A DNA stretch of 64,000 bases from Scyliorhinus canicula (lineage: Eukaryota): contig NC_052146.1 of the NCBI RefSeq assembly GCF_902713615.1, positions 293,392,000 through 293,455,999 of the forward strand, written 5' to 3'. Shown one piece after another: positions 3,812 through 50,760 of the stretch. Within the stretch, counting starts at the first letter, position 1. Every line of letters begins with the position of its first letter. Made by a program: the position numbers and the translations under genes. A model generated the notes under the pieces. The model did not search any database and had not been told where the DNA came from. It saw nothing but the letters and a program-made list of their open reading frames with translations.

Positions 3812-4025
3812 CAAGCAAATTACTGCCGATGCTGGAATCTGAAATAGAAAATGCTGGACAATCTCAGCAGGTCTGGCAACCTCTGTGGAGAGAGGAAGGG
3901 AGCGAACGTGTCGAGTCTGGATGACTCTTGGGTCACAGCTTTGAGAGTCACCCAAACTCGACAGGTTAGCTCCCTTCTCTCTCCACACAGACCTGCTGTG
4001 GTGGTCCAGCATTTTCTGTTTGGGT
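3812..4025. mobile_element. Degenerate Penelope-like palindromic element without insert
   Basis: Same AAGCAAATTACTGC..GATGCTGGA arm, with mirrored CCAGCATTTTCTG; a single arm also occurs at ~50350-50450. Confidence 0.75.
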
Positions 4026-27074: not shown

Positions 27075-29345
27075 TCTCAAAGGAGGGCACAAATAACATA
27101 CGAGAAATGTTGGGGAACACAGGGTTATTGAGAGGAACTGAAGGAAATCAGTACTGGTTGGGGAAATTGATGGGATTGAAGGCTGATAAACCCAGGGCCT
27201 GATAATCTACATCCCAGAGTATTTAAGGAAGTGACCCTAGAAATAGTGGATACATTGGTGGTCATCTTCCAAGATTCTATAGACTCTAGAACATTCCTGA
27301 AGATTGGAGGGTAGCTAATGTAGCCCCACTATCGAAAAAGAGAGGCAAGAGAAAACAGGGAATTGTAGAGCAGTCAGCCTGACATCAGCAGTGAGGAAAA
27401 TGCAGATTTAACAGAGGAGCACTGCAAGAAGTCTTACAGGGTGAAGTCCAACAGGTTTGTTTCAAATCACTAGCTTTCGGAGCACTGCTCGTTCCTCAGG
27501 TGAATCAGATGGCAGGATCAGATGGAGTCTGTATGGATTTATGAAAGGGAAATCATAGAAACAGAGAAAATAGGAGGACATTCAGCCCTTCGAGCCTGCT
27601 CCACCATTCATTATCATGGCTGATCATCCAACTCACTAGCCTAGTCTTGCCTTCCCCCCCCCTATTCTTCGAACCCCTTCGCCCCAAGTGCTATATCTAA
27701 CTGCTTCTTGAAGACATATGATGTTTTGGCATCAACTGCTTCCTGTGGTAACGAATTCCACAGACTCATCACTCTCTGGGTGAAGAAATTTCTCATCTCT
27801 GGTTTAGCTCACTGGGCTAAATCGCTGGCTTTTAAAGCAGACCAGCGAGGCCAGCAGCACGGTTCGATTCCCGTACCAGCCTCCCCGGACAGGCGCCGGA
27901 ATGTGGCGACTAGGGGCTTTTCACAGTAATTTCACTGAAGCCTACTCGTGATAATAAGCGATTTTCATTTCATTTCATTTTCCTAAATGGTTTACCCCAT
28001 ATCCTCAGACTGCGACCCCTGGTTCTGGACACCCCCACCATTGGGAACATCCTTCCTGCATCTACCCTGCCTTGTCCTGTTAGAACTTCATATATTTATA
28101 TGAGATCTCTTTTAATTCTTCTCAACCCAGCGAATACCATCCTAACCGACTCATTCTCTCCTCATACATCAATACCGCCATCCCAGGATTAGCCTGCTAA
28201 ATCTTTGCTGTACTCTCTCTACAGCAATAACATCCTTCCGCAGATAAGGAGACTAAAACTACACATAATATTCCAGGCATTTCCTCACTACGGCCATGTA
28301 TACATCACAGAATTGTTATGGTGTAGGAGGAGACCATTTGGTCCATTGTGTCTGCACTGGCTCTCCAAATGAGCATCGTGACAGAGCATCATTCCACCAA
28401 ACCCCTGCACATTAGATGATTATCTAATGCCCTCATAGAACATAGTGCAGAAGGCGGCCATTCGACCCATCAAGTCTGCACCGACCCACTTATGCCCTCA
28501 CTTCCACCCTATCCCCGTAACCCAATAACCTCTCCTAACCTTTTTGGTCACTAAGGGCAATTTAGCATGGCCAATCCACCTAACCTGCACGTCTTTGGAC
28601 TGTGGGAGGAAACTGGAGCACCCGGAGGAAACCCTCTTGAATGCCTCAATTGAACCTGCCTCCACCAGACTGCCAAGCAGCACATTCCCACCCGGAGCAT
28701 TCATTGTGTGAAAATATTTTTTCTCACATCAAATTTATTTTCTTTGCAAGTCAATTTAAATCCATGCCCTATTCTGCTGGATCCTTTTACGAGTGGGAAT
28801 AGTTTGTCCCTACCTACTCTGTTCAGCCCCTTCATGATTTTAAACATCCCTATCAAGTTTCCTCTCAACGTTCTTCTCTCTAAAGGAGAACAGTTCCTTG
28901 GGCAGCATGGTGGCACAGTGGGTTAGCCTTATTGCCTCACGGCGCCGAGGTCCCAGGTTCAATCCCGGCTCTGGTTCACTGTCCATGTGGAGTTTGCACA
29001 TTCTCCCCGTGTTTACGTGGGTTTCGCCCGCACAACCCAAAGATGCGCAGGGTAGGTGGATTGGCCACGCTAAATTGCCCCTTAATTGGAAAAAATGAAT
29101 TGGGTACTCTAAATTTATAAAAAATAATAAAGGGGAACAGTTCCAACCTCTCCAATCTATCCTCATAATGAAATGAAATGAAAATCGCTTATTGTCACGA
29201 GTAGGCTTCAATTAAGTTACTGTGAAAAGCCCCTAGTCGCCACATTACGGCGCCTGTCCGGGAAGGTTGGTACGGGAATCGAACCGTGCTGCTGGCCTGC
29301 TTTAAAAGCCAGCGATTTAGCTGAGTGAGCTAACCCAGCCCCTGT
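27075..29345. mobile_element. Cluster of CR1 fragments in both orientations, with SINEs and a Penelope-like fragment
   Basis: CR1 motifs (PEDWRVANV on plus; LRGNLIGMFKIMKG on minus). Confidence 0.8.
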
Positions 29346-30593: not shown

Positions 30594-32055
30594 TATGGTG
30601 GTGATCTGAAATAAAAGGGAAGAATTAAAATTCCAGAGGATGAAATAAAAATCCTATCCATCATTCACACCATGTCTCGGCCCTGGGTCACACATCTCCC
30701 CATGTATGTGTGGGTCTCACCCTCACTACCCAAAGACATGCAGGGTTGTGGGAGTGAGCATTGGCTACGCTAAATTGCCCCTTAATTTTTTTTTTTAAAT
30801 AGACCAAACGAATTGCACCCTACACCTCACAACACGATAGCAGCAAAGGGAACTCAAAACCTTGCAGAGAAGATGATGGAGGAAAACAAAAAAATCAAAT
30901 AAACATTCTGAGCTGAAGAAAAATTCAAGAAGCGAAGGCGCGGAAGGAAATCACCAGAGAAAAGCTCCAAAAGAAAGGCTTGGATGCTGACGGCAGAAAT
31001 TAAATTCCTTACTGCAGCATAAGCTCCACTGAATTCCATGGAAGCGCAGCTTCAAGAAGCAGAGTGTGTGCAGAGTCAGCAGACCTAATATGGGGGAGCT
31101 AAAAAATTAATTCCTGGACAATACAAGTGTGGAAAAAAGTTATATCCTGCAGTGGTCAGAAATTGCCATTTAAATTTCAGTCCAAGAAACCAGATTTCCA
31201 AGTCTGCGCCTGAACACATAGCTTGTTCTGCAGCAAGAAAAATAATTTAAAATCAATCACGGCTGAGTAGGAGCTTAAAAAACTCAGTAAAAGCAGGGAT
31301 TCAACTCTTCCAAGGCCTGACAACGTTTCACTAAAGTGGGAAAGACTCTAACCAGTAATTCCAGGCAAGCTTTGCTGAAAAAAGTTGAAAATGCTGTGAT
31401 CACAAACACAATGATGGCAGGAGCCTGCCAAAGGGGCAGCACGGTAGCATTGTGGATAGCACAATCGCTTCACAGCTCCAGGGTCCCAGGTTCGATTCCC
31501 GGCTTGGGTCACTGTCTGTGCGGAGTCTGCACATCCTCCCTGTGTGTGCGTGGGTTTCCTCCGGGTGCTCCGGTTTCCTCCCACAGTCCAAAGATGTGCA
31601 GGTTAGGTGGATTGGCCATGCTAAATTGCCCTTAGTGTCCAAAATTGCCCTTAGTGTTGGGTGGGGTTACTGGGTTATGGGGATAGGGTGGAGGTGTTGA
31701 CCTTGGGTAGGGTGCTCTTTCCAAGAGCTGGTGCAGACTCGATGGGCCGAATGGCCTCCTTCTGCGCTGTAAATTCTATGAAAACCTGCAAAGCACAGGA
31801 AAATCCTTTGTGAAGAAACGGTCAGCAGGGCCATATTGGATTTGCAGAAAACTCGTGAAGCTGAACCTGCAATTTAAAATTTTTAACCTTGATCAGAAAT
31901 TCACTCTTCCAGTTCAACAACTTTGAAGGCTCTGGAGAAAGAGAGATTTCTGAGAAAAGACGGAAACTGAACAAATTAACACACTGCTTTTCTTTGGCAG
32001 GATCGATAGTCGACAATATAATAGCTAGACAAGGAATCAACAAATCATCTGTAAA

Positions 32056-32692
32056 AAAAAAAGCAAATTACTGCGGATGCTGGAGTCTGAAACAAAAGAG
32101 AAAATACTGGAAAATCTCAGCAGGTCTGGCAGCATCTGTAGGGAGAGAAAAGAGCTAACGTTTCAAGTCCGTTGACTCTTTGTCAAAGCTCATGGGATCA
32201 TAGAAAATAGGAGGCCAGCGAATACAATCCTAACCGACTCATTCTCTCCTCATACATCAGTACTGCCATCCCAGGATTAGTCTGCTAAATCTTTGCTGCA
32301 CTCTCTCTACAGCAATAACATCCTTCCGCAGATAAGGAGACTAAAACTACACATAATATTCCAGGTGTTTCCTCACTAAGGCCCTGTATATATATCACAG
32401 AATTGTTATGGTGTAGAAGGAGACCATTTGGTCCATTGTGTCTGCACTGGCTCTCCAAATGAGCACCGTGACTGAGCAACATTTCACCAAACCCCTGCAT
32501 ATTATAGATGATTATCTAATGCCCTCTTGAATGCCTCAATTGAACCTGCCTCCACCAGACTTCCAAGCAGCACATTCCCACCCGGAGCACCCAGAGCTTT
32601 GACAAAGAGTCATCGGACTCGAAACGTTAGCTCTTTTCTCTCCCTACAGATGCTGCCAGTCCTGCTGAGATTTTCCAGCATTTTCTCTCTCT
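32056..32692. mobile_element. Penelope-like inverted-repeat element carrying a captured ~400-bp insert
   Basis: Arms 32056-32191 and 32594-32692 are reverse complements; 14-bp TSD AAATCATCTGTAAA (32042-32055 / 32693-32706). Confidence 0.85.
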
Positions 32693-32749
32693 AAATCATC
32701 TGTAAAGTTTGATGAAGTTGTAAAATCATCCATACTTTTTATTCTTTCA

Positions 32750-33975
32750 TGGGACATAGCCGCTGGCTAGTCCAACATTTTTATTGCCCATCCTCAATTT
32801 TCCTTGAGAAGCTGGTGGTTAGTCACCTTCTTGAACTGCTGCAGTTCATGTGGTATAAGAACACCCATGGTGTCAATAAAAGATTATTATTCGGAAGGGA
32901 GTTTCAGGATATTGACCCAGCGACAGTGAAGGAATGGTGACAGTTCCAAATGAGGATGGCGAATGGCTTGGAGGGGAAATTGCAGGTGGTGGTGTTCCCA
33001 TGCATCTGCTGCCCTTGTTCTTCCAGGTGGTAGAGGTTGAAGGTTTGGAAGATACTAAAGAAGCTTTGGTGAGTTGTTGCAGTGCATTTTGTAGATGGCA
33101 CACGGCTGCATCGTGCGCCAGTGGTGGAGGATGGGGTGACAATGAAGCAGGTTGCTTTGTCCTGGATGGAGTCAAGTTTCTTGAATGTTGTTGGAGCTGG
33201 ACTCATCCAGGAAAGTGGAGTGTATTCTGGACTTGTGCCTTGTGGACAGGCTTTGGGGAATTAGTCGACACATGTTTCCCAGCCTCTTGTAGCCACAGTA
33301 TGTATATGGCTGGCTCAGTTCAGTTGGTAACCCGCCCCAAGATGTTGATAATGGGGGAATTCAGCAAAGGTAATGCATTGAATGACAAGGAGAGATGTTT
33401 AGATTCTCTCTTGGTGGAGATGGCCATTGCCTGGCACAAATGTTACTCGTCACTGATTCAGGTCTTGCTGCGTGTGAGCAAGAACTGTTTCAGTATCTGA
33501 GGAGTCACGGATGTTGTGCAATCATCCCCGCTTCTAACCTTATGATGGAGGGAAGGTCATTGATAAACCAGCTGAAGATGGAAGATAGAAACTACCCTAA
33601 AGAACTCTGCAGTGATGTCCTAGGAGGAGATGATTGACCTCCAACAACCACAACCATCTTTCTTTGTAATAGGTGCGACTCCAACCAATGGAACGTCTCC
33701 CCCCCCCCCCCCCCAAACCCCGGTTTCCATTGATTTCAGTTTTGCTAGGGTCTCTTTGATGCCATACTCAGTCAGTCAAATGCTGCCCTGATGTCAAGGG
33801 CAGTTACTCGCACCTCACCTCTGGAGATCAGCTCTTTGATTCATGTTTTGATTAAGGCTGTAATGAGGTCAGGAGCGGAGTGGCCCTGACTGAATGTAAA
33901 TCAAGCAAGAGTGAGAAGGTTGTTTCTGATTAAGTGCCACTTGACAGTACTGTCGACAACACTTTCAATCACTTA
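32750..33975 (-). mobile_element. Old CR1/L2-group LINE fragments plus associated tail repeat
   Basis: KLDSIQDKATCFI and RT remnants on the minus strand; heavily degenerate. Confidence 0.6.
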
Positions 33976-48964: not shown

Positions 48965-50760
48965 GTACCAATGATCTCTGTCTTGCTGCTGCATGTGCCC
49001 CATTGATGATGAGCTGTGTGCTTATGTACCTGTCACTCTACCTGCAGCACTGGTGGTGCAGGCGGGATACACTGGGCACACCTTCGCATTAGTATGAAGC
49101 ACCCCGCTTTGAAGTTTAGTTGTCACCTCTATTGCTCTATTCAAAATTTTAGCGACTCGTGATCTCAATACGTTTGATACGCAGCGCATGAGAGATGTAT
49201 AGTTATAAAGAAGAAGCTTAGCTAAGCATGGGTACAATCTCCTGTCTGAGGAATGAAAACAGAAAAGTTGGAAAAACTAAGCACCTCTAGAGAGAGAAAC
49301 AGAGTCCTTGAGGAAGTTGCCAACCATTGCCCTGTTTGCAGTTCACCACTTTACTGTTTGTATAGCTCACTCAGGCCGAGAACTAAAAAGATTACACTTG
49401 TATAGCGACTGTAGGAAGTACCAAAGCACTTTACAGTCAGTGGAGTGCTTTTCAGCTGTAGTCACTGATGTGACATAGGAAATGTGGCTGCCTGCATTGT
49501 GCAGGTAATCTGTTGTTTGAGGGACGTTATGGTGTTAATATAGGAGTGCAGAGGCAAATCTGGTCAAAGCCCAGTTAGATATGTTCTCTGGAAATAGAAG
49601 TAGAAGAGGTGGAAATGTTATAGGATTTGGTAGGACTGATCAGTTTTAGATCACAGCAGGGCAGCATGGTGACGCAGTGGGTTAGCCCTGCTGCCTCAGG
49701 ACGCCGAGGTCCCAGGTTCAATCCCGGCTCTGGGTCACTGTCCGTGTGGAGTTTGCACATTCTCCCCGTGTTTGCGTGGGTTTCGCCCCCACAACCCAAA
49801 AGATGTGCAGGGTAGGTGGATTGGCCACACTAAATTGCTCCTTAATTGGAAACAATTAATTGGGTACACTAATTTTTTTTAAAAAGTTTTAGATCATAGA
49901 AACCCTACTCTGCAGAAGAAGGCCATTTGGCCCATCAAGATGGCACTGATCCTCCAATCGAGCAGCCTATGCAGGCTGATTCCCCTGTCCTATCCCTGTA
50001 ACCTCAGTTAACCTGCACATCTTTGGACACTACGGGGCAATTGATCATATCCAATCCACCTAACTTACACAACTTTGGACTGTGGGAGAATTGGAGCACC
50101 TGAAGGAAACCCATGCAGACACAGGGAGAACGTGCAAACACCACACAGTCACCCAAGACCAGAATTGAACCTGGGTCCCTGCCGCTGTGAGACAGCAGTG
50201 CTAACCATTGTGCCACCATGCTGTCTGTTTGAATGGAAGCATAATGAAAGTGGGCAGGTTGATGATGGCTTTATGTGTGATTTGAATTGCATTGTGATTA
50301 AACGTGGCTGTATTTAGATCTGGTAGGAAAAAGGAATTGTTTTGTTAACCAAAGGAAAAATGCTGGAAAATCTCAGCAGGTCTGACAGCATCTATAGTGA
50401 GAGAAAAGAGCTAACCTTTCGAGTCCAGATGACCCTTTGTCAAAGCTGTCAAAGAAAAAAAAATCTGTTAATGTTGAAGATGGAGCAAAAGGTTTTAAAT
50501 CAGATGTGGAAAGGAGAAAGAGCAAGATTCCTAATCAAAGCAGAAATTTGAGGCATTTAATTGATACGAAGATTAAGCATAATCAAGTAAATCAAGACTT
50601 TAAAAAACCCTAACACCCAACTATGGAACCATTCATTTTTAGGATGTGGACATCACTGGCATTTATTGCCCAATCCCAATTCCTCCTGGGAAGGTGCAAG
50701 GGTAGGGGTTTGGTAAAACTTTCTTGGCCAGTTCCAAGGGCAGTTAAGAGTCAACCACAG

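What the first reader, a model, noticed from the sequence alone, without database searches (positions are those of the whole stretch)
32042..32706. Penelope-like palindromic element carrying ~400 bp of neighbouring TFB2M intron at its symmetry axis
Seen: inverted arms with a perfect 14-bp TSD enclose an insert placed where the empty copy (3812-4025) has its AGCT centre. Insert 32215-32589 is a close copy of 28127-28699, a junction of two CR1 fragments about 4 kb away in the same gene. It lacks the SINE at 28435-28631 (TSD CCCTC), so that SINE entered the donor after copying. The first ~20 bp of the insert (GGGATCATAGAAAATAGGAGG) resemble 27547-27578, suggesting a template jump from 27.55 to 28.13 kb. 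Inference: either the element's reverse transcriptase switched onto local TFB2M pre-mRNA during integration, or a break at the hairpin tip was repaired from nearby DNA. Either route would let such palindromes capture host sequence.
Basis: partly seen in the sequence, partly recalled or inferred. Interest (0 to 1): 0.8.

Follow-up and report, generated by a model that had tools for sequence, protein, structure and literature searches.

The report
Penelope retroelement pair bridged by nearby DNA
A shark Penelope-like retrotransposon landed as its usual head-to-head pair of short end-pieces, but the gap between them was bridged by about 390 bases copied in three co-linear pieces from 3.5-4.6 kb upstream, and smaller bridges of this kind recur in the family, so the copy preserves how these elements finish integrating.

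Summary
Arms 32097-32196 and 32590-32688 are 95-96% complementary, a perfect 14-bp TSD bounds the unit, and the 393-bp centre copies 28127-28434 (93.6%) and 28632-28699 (98.5%). Genome-wide, only that neighbouring locus spans the filler's internal junction.

The "palindromic element" is not a separate kind of element. It is the last 132 nt of an abundant RT + GIY-YIG Penelope-like element (PLE), inserted in the known PLE way. One arm carries the ~38-nt tail and the inverted arm lacks it.

In 14 head-to-head pairs, nine are joined directly and four carry fillers of 40 nt or more. Fillers sit exactly where the two copies meet, even when the arms are very unequal, and each composite has its own TSD. 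Two other fillers (L017, L036) are also copied from DNA 0.3-1.5 kb away, and L017 uses both strands. Two further fillers have no donor anywhere in the genome.

Arm-to-arm divergence (about 4%) matches filler-to-donor divergence (about 5%).

Best reading: both target strands primed cDNA, and the gap between the cDNA ends was filled during integration by template-switching synthesis on nearby DNA. Nascent RNA is a less likely template, and a later break at the hairpin tip is disfavoured.

This is a known kind of element and event with a new, locally templated variant. The "TFB2M" and "CR1" labels and the late-SINE inference were not confirmed.

The parts
32042..32055 (.). Left target-site duplication AAATCATCTGTAAA
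   Evidence: Exact 14-bp direct repeat with 32693-32706
32056..32190 (-). Long arm: last 132 nt of the PLE (ruler 569-700, including the ~38-nt tail), read antisense on the + strand, plus 3 extra A next to the TSD
   Evidence: 96.2% to the 3' terminus of a natural copy, L046; 95-97% to dozens of genomic copies
32191..32196 (.). CATGGG, an extension beyond the discrete 5' end, mirrored as CCCAG on the other arm
   Evidence: CAT/CATG beyond position 569 recurs in L016, L017, L032, L033, L062 and C23:16399049
32197..32214 (+). 18-nt leader of the filler, probably copied from 27560-27577 (start of the same donor repeat)
   Evidence: 16/18 ungapped, or 18/18 with one 8-nt slip between AGAAA repeats; only near-match in the window, 0.10 expected; 11 exact copies in the genome
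32215..32526 (+). Filler segment copied from 28127-28434
   Evidence: 93.6% over 312 nt; alignment; unique genome-wide across the junction at query 194
32522..32589 (+). Filler segment copied from 28632-28699 (shares CCCTC 32522-32526 with the previous segment)
   Evidence: 98.5% over 68 nt
32590..32594 (.). CCCAG, the mirror of the CATGGG extension
32595..32692 (+). Short arm: PLE ruler 569-662 in sense, lacking the tail, then CTCT
   Evidence: 96.8% to the L046 terminus; tailless arms end at 644-675, mostly 661-673, in all 20+ pairs examined
32693..32706 (.). Right target-site duplication
27548..28312 (+). Donor repeat, complete and in context (~600-bp family unit interrupted by a tRNA-like SINE at about 27802-27980); source of the leader and the first filler segment
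   Evidence: Other family copies, e.g. L011, align contiguously to 27548-27797 and then 27975-28312. This fixes the direction as donor to filler
28313..28434 (+). Near-unique donor sequence copied into the filler
   Evidence: Repeat coverage 0-1 in 311 kb of sample
28435..28631 (+). Block absent from the filler: a 3'-truncated 5' fragment of an abundant TCATAGAA... repeat, bounded by CCCTC
   Evidence: Family copies continue past ...GGAGGAAACCC; homology spans 28433-28634; age test inconclusive
28632..28699 (+). Last donor segment
3813..4017 (.). Older head-to-head pair of the same family, joined directly at AGCT, TSD GGTTTAAAT
50347..50447 (-). Solo tailless copy of the same terminus (ruler 569-668)

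Best explanation
This is one integration event of a Penelope-like retrotransposon. Shown: the element's endonuclease made a 14-nt staggered break. The two arms are two copies of the element's 3' end in opposite orientation, one starting at the outermost site (with tail) and one about 38 nt further in (without tail). Both run to the same discrete 5' end of a 132-nt short form. Inferred: each 3' end of the broken target primed its own cDNA on element RNA, as the anole PLE protein does in vitro. Normally the two cDNA 3' ends, which finish in the self-complementary AGCT, pair with each other and give a tight palindrome. Here both ends carried extra letters (C(A)TGGG) and were not joined directly. 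Instead one end was extended by a template-switching polymerase on sequence 3.5-4.6 kb upstream on the same chromosome. It copied three co-linear pieces (about 27560-77, 28127-28434, 28632-28699) with two forward jumps, and was then joined to the other end. I favour chromosomal DNA as the template, in the manner of microhomology-primed, polymerase-theta- or MMBIR-like templated insertion, or the element's own RT copying DNA. Which polymerase did it, and in which direction, is not resolved.
For: Family identity: an ORF with RVT_1 (E=2e-6) and YIDD, followed by a C-terminal LVYCIRCSQCGLPYIGET...R...EH block. Atlas neighbours at 0.97 combine RVT_1, HTH_animal and GIY-YIG. The ORF lies upstream of the arm sequence in L045 and L047. 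Two-sided priming: in every pair one arm reaches ruler 694-700 and the other stops at 644-675, matching the two RT start sites and the extension of both strands shown for the anole PLE (PMC11167929) and the known 'inverted 5'-truncated copy plus 30-40-bp tail' (PMC8557442). Inner ends are often unequal (L019: 468 against -238; L036: 500 against 218), which a self-copying snap-back does not predict. Filling during integration: 4 of 14 pairs carry fillers of 40 nt or more, always at the copy-to-copy junction, and each composite has its own 10-16-bp TSD. Arm-to-arm divergence is 4/94 and filler-to-donor divergence is 18/375 plus 2 indels. Local DNA templating: the L036 filler matches a site about 300 bp away (45 nt, 93%, E=1e-13). 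The L017 filler is a 19/19 match on the minus strand 1.45 kb away plus a 23/25 match on the plus strand 1.1 kb away, with TGAT overlap, and its first donor is preceded by CTTTGTCATTGCT, which resembles the arm end. A control of 311 kb of unrelated sequence gives no comparable hit. The window filler's donor is unique in the genome and the direction is donor to filler.
Against: No direct evidence identifies the template as DNA rather than RNA for the window copy, because a co-linear, single-strand origin fits a nascent transcript equally well. At 393 nt it is long for polymerase-theta-type insertions. Two of its four junctions show no microhomology (27577 to 28127, and 28699 to the arm). Fillers in L028 and L058 have no second site anywhere in the genome within 3 mismatches, so local DNA copying is not the whole story. 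The sample is small (14 pairs, 3-4 mapped donors) and partly chosen by similarity to the query. The age comparison has wide error.
Confidence: 0.6

Rival explanations
1. The integration event is the same, but the bridge was reverse-transcribed from RNA. After reaching the 5' end of the element RNA, the PLE RT jumped onto nascent host pre-mRNA or an intron transcribed from the donor region, skipped two segments by intramolecular template switching, and the product was then joined to the other cDNA.
For: The three pieces are co-linear, on one strand and from one short region, as expected for a single RNA molecule. The CCCTC-bounded skip looks like the direct-repeat deletion typical of RTs. PLEs are reported to mobilise intron-containing host sequence and to frame unrelated sequence between pLTRs with TSDs (PMC3846280). 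L1 RT template switching is established (PMC11702581). Fillers without any genomic donor could be patchworks of RNA origin.
Against: The L017 filler uses both strands of flanking DNA. The donors of L036 and L017 were not shown to be transcribed. Entry into the donor is at internal positions, not at an RNA 3' end. No listed holder run is on record as RNA, and the host gene and its strand are unverified. Neither skipped segment has GT-AG or CT-AC boundaries (read).
Confidence: 0.22
2. This was a two-step history. The element first inserted as a tight palindrome. Later the palindrome extruded a hairpin or cruciform, was cut at its tip, and the break was repaired by copying from nearby DNA.
For: In the window copy both arms end at the same position, so the filler sits on the symmetry axis. 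Long palindromes are known to be fragile (general knowledge). A donor in cis a few kb away suits synthesis-dependent repair.
Against: In L036 and L028 the filler lies at the junction of arms that differ by hundreds of nt, which is not at a hairpin tip. The filler-to-donor divergence (about 5%) is not lower than the arm-to-arm divergence (about 4%). The TSD and both arms are intact, with no resection.
Confidence: 0.12
3. This is an artefact or a coincidence: either a mis-assembly of a foldback, or two independent insertions in opposite orientation flanking a small segmental duplication.
For: Palindromes and PLE arrays are known to trouble assemblies (PMC8557442). Solo tailless copies do exist (50347-50447).
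Against: The copies differ by 4-6% rather than being identical. A perfect 14-bp TSD bounds the whole composite and neither arm has a TSD of its own. Junction-spanning words occur in contigs of two studies. The same architecture recurs at other loci.
Confidence: 0.04

Closest known systems
Canonical EN+ Penelope-like elements and their insertion architecture (Penelope/Poseidon, Neptune and similar; Evgen'ev and Arkhipova 2005, Craig et al. 2021, PMC8557442)
   Same: A single ORF with RT then a C-terminal GIY-YIG-like endonuclease. Heavy 5' truncation. An adjacent inverted 5'-truncated copy. A 30-40-bp tail at one end only. TSDs of variable length. A palindrome at the inverted junction.
   Different: No hammerhead ribozyme was found in the parts examined. 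About half of the copies are a discrete 132-nt short form. The clade was not determined.
Anole PLE (PAc) in vitro: nicking and extension of both strands, with two internal RT start sites that define the tail (Frangieh et al. 2024, PMC11167929)
   Same: The genomic copies here look like the end product. One arm starts at the outer site and the other about 38 nt further in, each adjoining one side of a staggered cut.
   Different: That work did not follow how the two extended ends are joined. The shark copies record that step, either by direct AGCT pairing or through fillers.
Unrelated or host sequences framed by PLE pLTRs and TSDs in Adineta vaga (Arkhipova et al. 2013, PMC3846280)
   Same: Foreign sequence lies between PLE terminal repeats inside one TSD. 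Introns or non-coding DNA are retained.
   Different: There the sequence lies between direct pLTRs and the event is read as trans-mobilisation of a transcript. Here the sequence lies between head-to-head arms, is a patchwork, and its donor is identified a few kb (or less) away in cis.
L1 twin priming, and templated insertions or template switching at L1 insertion junctions (PMC2837659, PMC11702581)
   Same: The second target strand primes on the RNA internally. The TSD is preserved. The two cDNAs are joined with or without microhomology, and junctions sometimes carry extra templated sequence.
   Different: In L1 the two parts are different regions of the RNA, giving an inversion. Here both are the same short region, giving a palindrome. 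The endonuclease is GIY-YIG rather than APE.
Templated insertions in break repair (polymerase-theta end joining, MMBIR; PMC2621351, PMC12426944)
   Same: Donors in cis close to the break, use of both strands, several switches in a row, and short microhomologies (TGAT, CCCTC, GGG).
   Different: 393 nt is at the long end for theta-mediated events. The break here is made and held by a retroelement. Enzyme dependence is untested.

Membership tests
Penelope-like element (EN+ PLE) | Reverse transcriptase domain in the element's ORF | tested here: met
   RVT_1 E=2e-6 at 28.1 bits, just under Pfam's 29.6 cut-off. YIDD is in the ORF. The nearest Atlas clusters carry RVT_1. PLE-type versus LINE-type RT was not resolved by phylogeny.
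Penelope-like element (EN+ PLE) | GIY-YIG endonuclease fused C-terminal to the RT | tested here: inconclusive
   Pfam GIY-YIG gives no hit on the C-terminal 127 aa. The block LVYCIRCSQCGLPYIGETKRRLGDPFAEH, preceded by CNRRRCNTC, is visible, and the top Atlas cluster (0.97) has PF01541 in 47% of its members.
Penelope-like element (EN+ PLE) | 5'-truncated copies with an adjacent inverted 5'-truncated copy (head to head) | tested here: met
   14 pairs in the sample, and many more in pattern searches.
Penelope-like element (EN+ PLE) | [quoted passage not shown] | tested here: met
   One arm reaches ruler 694-700 and the other ends at 644-675, mostly 661-673, in all pairs.
Penelope-like element (EN+ PLE) | Target-site duplications of variable length | tested here: met
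   10-16 bp around six composites and 10-13 bp around solo copies.
Penelope-like element (EN+ PLE) | Hammerhead ribozyme motif in the pLTR | tested here: not met
   No Rfam hammerhead at E<=1 in the window copy, L046, L042 or L052. No CUGANGA...GAAA core in the last 1.1 kb or in three ORF-bearing loci, apart from one likely chance hit inside an ORF. The 5' pLTR of a full-length copy may not have been covered, and some PLE clades lack the motif.
Penelope-like element (EN+ PLE) | Partial tandem arrangement (pseudo-LTRs) | tested here: inconclusive
   L016 has two direct units plus one inverted unit, and L026 shares its inter-unit sequence.
Templated insertion at a break (TMEJ/MMBIR-like) | Filler copied from sequence in cis near the break | tested here: met
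   Window: 3.5-4.6 kb away, unique in the genome. L036: about 300 bp. L017: 1.1 and 1.45 kb. The control was clean. Not met for L028 and L058.
Templated insertion at a break (TMEJ/MMBIR-like) | Microhomology at switch points, serial switches, either strand | tested here: inconclusive
   L017: TGAT overlap, both strands, and an 11/13 homeology at the priming site. Window: GGG(A) and CCCTC at two junctions, none at the other two.
Templated insertion at a break (TMEJ/MMBIR-like) | Dependence on a host repair polymerase | not testable with these tools
   Needs genetics or biochemistry.
RT template switching to cellular RNA (L1-U6-type chimeras) | The acceptor is an RNA, and the chimera's polarity follows the transcript | not tested
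   The host gene and its strand are unverified. Both synthesis directions are compatible with the structure.

The most novel reading that the evidence does not exclude
In this shark, PLE integration regularly leaves a two-ended intermediate. When its cDNA ends fail to pair through AGCT, it samples nearby chromosomal DNA (or nascent RNA) to bridge the gap. With on the order of 10^4-10^5 copies, the family would then be a systematic source of short-range duplications of intronic and intergenic sequence enclosed in hairpin arms. The fillers would form a genome-wide natural record of the unknown last steps of PLE transposition. Some composites are later amplified further (the L057-type copy occurs about 20 times).
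Probability: 0.3. Interest if true: 0.6.

Novelty: new variant of a known kind. Interest (0 to 1): 0.45.

Why it matters
How Penelope-like elements complete integration is still open. The only biochemical study (PMC11167929) shows that both strands are nicked and extended, but it leaves the joining of the ends "yet to be validated". These shark copies are the finished products of that step. They suggest that the two cDNAs usually pair through a self-complementary AGCT at their ends. In a sizeable minority the gap is instead filled by copying nearby sequence, sometimes from both strands. That gives a concrete prediction that a census can test, and it identifies a mechanism by which an abundant retroelement duplicates local host DNA. 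For genome annotation, such hairpin "elements" with unique centres should be read as PLE insertion scars and not as a new transposon or as miRNA-like genes.

Tried and rejected
- **Rfam:** no family matched the window copy. On other copies there were only sub-threshold miRNA-like hits caused by the perfect hairpin, and no hammerhead.
- **Pfam on decayed ORF pieces of L045 and L047:** nothing. I switched to the longer ORF in L052.
- **PDB sequence search with the ORF:** no meaningful hit.
- **PF00398 search to confirm TFB2M and its strand:** no hit in the window, so gene identity and orientation are left unverified.
- **Earlier scan notes:** none for this place or these words.
- **The fetch from genomes for 10-kb neighbourhoods of other filler-bearing copies:** Donor searches for those copies are therefore limited to ±1.5 kb, and the loci could not be cut out.
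- **Splicing as the cause of the two skips:** rejected. No GT-AG or CT-AC boundaries exist in any register.
- **5' transduction from a source copy next to the donor:** rejected. There is no PLE at 28699 and no other copy of the composite in the genome.
- **Snap-back self-copying as the origin of the arms:** considered less likely, because the inner ends are unequal and the tailless arm always stops at 644-675, mostly 661-673.
- **Dating the 28435-28631 block against its family:** inconclusive.
- **Similarity between the filler/right-arm junction (GGAGCACCCAGAG) and the end of the skipped block (GGAGCACCCGGAG):** noted, but treated as chance.
- **Consensus:** One search used per-column majorities only to count differences.
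Full report
**1. The observation**

- Arms 32097-32191 and 32594-32688 are 96% complementary over 95 nt. AAATCATCTGTAAA is repeated exactly at 32042-32055 and 32693-32706.
- BLAST of the unit against the window extends the arms to 32097-32196 and 32590-32688 (95%). It shows 32215-32526 = 28127-28434 (93.6%) and 32522-32589 = 28632-28699 (98.5%), on the same strand, with 28435-28631 missing (alignment).
- A search of the whole 4.22-Gb genome found only that neighbouring locus spanning the filler's internal junction (query 19-330, 94%). Thirty-eight dispersed repeat copies stop at query position 194 and reach at most 89%. The centre is therefore a copy of this particular locus and not part of a family consensus.
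- Direction of copying: in the donor the first repeat is complete and in context. Other family members align contiguously to 27548-27797 and then 27975-28312, so the repeat is interrupted here by a tRNA-like SINE. The rest of the donor is near-unique. The element holds only sub-fragments, so the direction is donor to filler.

**2. What the 'palindromic element' is**

The left arm has more than 2,600 first-look candidates in the genome, many 95-97% identical. Reading 29 of them showed that the arm is a fixed terminus.
- Every copy starts with AAAAGCAAATTACTGCGG...
- Many continue past ...CAAAGCT into a shared internal sequence.
- Others stop at various points and fold back.

Longer copies place this terminus about 700 nt downstream of an ORF.
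- A better-preserved ORF (L052:1810-3333) has RVT_1 (E=2e-6, 28 bits, just below Pfam's cut-off) and YIDD.
- It has a C-terminal block LVYCIRCSQCGLPYIGET...R...EH, preceded by a CxxxxCxxC motif.
- Its nearest Atlas clusters (0.97) combine RVT_1, HTH_animal and GIY-YIG.
- RT followed by a C-terminal GIY-YIG endonuclease is the layout of canonical EN+ Penelope-like elements.
- Pfam's GIY-YIG model itself did not fire, and no hammerhead ribozyme was found. I mark those two membership features as inconclusive and not met.

**3. Anatomy against a ruler**

The ruler is the last 700 nt of a natural copy (L046), with 700 as the tail end.
- About 20 of roughly 45 copies begin at exactly position 569 (AGCTTTGACAAAG...). 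This is a discrete 5' end that defines a 132-nt short form.
- In every head-to-head pair, one arm reaches 694-700 and the other ends at 644-675, mostly 661-673.
- The window copy fits both rules: long arm 32059-32190 = 569-700 (antisense on the + strand), short arm 32595-32688 = 569-662 (sense).

This is the published PLE architecture: "an inverted 5'-truncated copy ... immediately adjacent" and "a 30- to 40-bp extension (tail)" at one end (PMC8557442). It also matches the anole PLE protein, which nicks and extends both target strands and starts reverse transcription at two adjacent internal sites that delimit the tail (PMC11167929).

The inner ends of the two arms are often very unequal (L019: 468 against -238; L036: 500 against 218; L029, L014, L034). 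That fits two independently primed cDNAs better than a cDNA snapping back on itself. The tailless arm's constant stop near 661-673 fits a second start site. AGCT, the last four letters of both cDNAs in the short form, is self-complementary. Two such ends can pair and prime on each other, which explains the tight palindromes centred on AGCT (L042, L016, and window 3813-4017).

**4. The filler is one of a class**

Among 14 head-to-head pairs in the sample:
- Nine are joined with -12 to +6 nt.
- Four carry fillers of 40 nt or more: L028 (40), L036 (51), L017 (56) and the window (393 plus the short extensions).
- One apparent gap (L044) is only the ruler's limit.

Pattern searches for arms 40-70 and 90-120 nt apart found further independent foreign fillers: L058, L062, L061, C23:16399049, C20:36208477, C7:181373590, C20:40058347, C15:54166245 and others. 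One filler-bearing pair is amplified about 20-fold on unplaced contigs. The whole composite is bounded by its own TSD in the window (14 bp), L017 (15, one mismatch), L062 (16, one mismatch), L028 (12, one mismatch), L057 (11, one mismatch) and L036 (10, one mismatch). Each is therefore a single insertion event.

**5. Where fillers come from**

- L036: 45 of the filler's 51 nt match a site about 300 bp away in the flank (93%, E=1e-13).
- L017: the filler is a patchwork of a 19/19 match 1.45 kb away on the minus strand and a 23/25 match 1.1 kb away on the plus strand. The two overlap by TGAT. The first donor is preceded by CTTTGTCATTGCT, a near-copy of the arm's end CTTTGTCAAAGCT.
- L061: the filler combines an 18-nt local match with snippets of its own arms.
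- Control: against 311 kb of unrelated sequence from the same genome, the L017 and L036 fillers have no comparable match.
- Exceptions: a 30-mer of the L058 filler and the 40-nt L028 filler have no second site in the genome within three mismatches. L057 and L062 have no donor within ±1.5 kb. Local copying therefore explains some fillers, not all.

**6. The window's filler in detail**

- The 18-nt leader (32197-32214) is a rare word, with 11 exact copies in the genome. Its only near-match in the window is 27560-27577, at the very start of the same donor repeat, 550 bp upstream of the main donor segment, on the same strand and in order. About 0.10 such matches are expected by chance.
- The filler is thus three co-linear pieces with two forward jumps, skipping 549 and 197 nt.
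- Microhomology at the four junctions, from left to right, is GGG(A), none, CCCTC and none.
- Neither skip has splice-site boundaries in any register.
- Both arms carry the same short extension beyond position 569 (CATGGG and CCCAG). CAT or CATG beyond 569 recurs in other copies, so part of it comes from the RNA's 5' end. The terminal G's would have prevented AGCT or CATG pairing, which may be why this event needed a bridge. That last point is inference.

**7. Timing**

- The arms differ at 4 of 94 aligned positions, two of them at sites that are polymorphic in the family.
- The filler and donor differ by 18 substitutions and 2 indels over 375 nt.
- The filler is therefore not younger than the arms, within wide error.
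- Fillers also sit at copy-to-copy junctions irrespective of symmetry. Together these points favour filling during integration over a later break at a hairpin tip.

**8. Template and enzyme**

These are not resolved for the window copy. Either cDNA could have been the one extended, and a single-strand, co-linear origin fits nascent RNA as well as DNA. I favour DNA because L017 uses both strands of flanking DNA and because of the homeology-primed start there.

My odds:
- Bridging during integration on DNA: about 0.6.
- Bridging during integration on RNA: about 0.22.
- Later repair at a hairpin tip: about 0.12.
- Artefact or coincidence: about 0.04.

**9. The skipped block**

28435-28631 is not a clean SINE insertion. 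It is the first ~200 nt of an abundant TCATAGAA... repeat whose other copies continue beyond ...GGAGGAAACCC. The TC and CCC of the flanking CCCTC are the repeat's own letters. Its mean identity to 15 other members (0.843; range 0.764-0.862) does not show it to be younger than the duplication. It may have entered the donor later, or the copying polymerase may have jumped across the CCCTC repeat. I cannot decide between these.

**10. Assembly**

All three sampled 31-mers from a 61-nt stretch, in which every word spans a filler junction, are held by contigs of two samples from two studies. Combined with the 4-6% divergences and the intact TSD, a mis-assembly is unlikely.

**11. Comparison with what is known, and verdict**

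- PLE inverted pairs, tails, junction palindromes and variable TSDs are textbook features for this class.
- Foreign sequence framed by PLE terminal repeats inside a TSD has been reported in a rotifer (PMC3846280).
- Twin priming and templated insertions are documented at L1 insertion sites (PMC2837659, PMC11702581).

What appears new is that, for a PLE, the foreign centre can be traced to donors a few hundred bases to a few kilobases away in cis, as a multi-piece patchwork, in several independent copies. I could not find this in the papers searched, and the search was limited.

I rate it a new variant of a known kind. It is of moderate interest to transposon and repair specialists, mainly because the fillers offer a census-testable record of the unknown last step of PLE integration.

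The labels "TFB2M intron" and "CR1" remain unverified.

Noticed in passing
L057:1392-1670, and about 20 near-identical places on unplaced contigs (C120, C140, C150, C173, C184, C188 and others): One head-to-head PLE pair with a 51-nt foreign filler has been amplified about 20-fold, apparently as part of a satellite or segmental duplication on unplaced contigs.
   Followed up: no
L042:1543-1718: Perfect PLE pairs score as miRNA-precursor-like hairpins against several Rfam miRNA models (up to 59.9 bits), all below their gathering scores. This could lead to false miRNA calls, and such pairs may be a real source of hairpin RNA.
   Followed up: no
Ruler position 569 of the family; window 32190/32191 and 32594/32595: About half of all copies start at exactly AGCTTTGACAAAG, often with extra CAT or CATG. 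So there is a 132-nt short form with a discrete 5' end, with no hammerhead motif to explain it. It could be a transcription start or a processing site.
   Followed up: partly
window 28433-28634: A 3'-truncated 5' fragment of an abundant TCATAGAA... repeat, bounded by CCCTC that is partly its own sequence. It is either a microhomology-mediated insertion or the site of a polymerase jump, and is not a standard SINE insertion.
   Followed up: partly
window 27802-27980: A tRNA-like SINE interrupts the ~600-bp repeat 27548-28312. It lies in the part of the donor that the filler skips.
   Followed up: no
window 50347-50447: A solo copy of the PLE terminus without the tail (ruler 569-668), followed by an A-run. 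It shows that the inner start site is also used for single-arm insertions.
   Followed up: no
L020:1501-1700 (read on the strand shown): The 5' junction carries a slipped duplicate of the arm end and the flank (CTTTGTCAAAGCTGGCGA / CTTTGTCAACGCTGGCGA). This is another trace of template slippage at the cDNA 3' end.
   Followed up: no
G000:C1:135967369 and G000:C1:136033830: Two near-identical filler-bearing PLE pairs lie 66 kb apart on the same chromosome, suggesting a later segmental duplication that included the composite.
   Followed up: no
Runs X12-X14 (organism B): A second species' runs hold about 20% of the sampled words of window 31950-32800.
   Followed up: no
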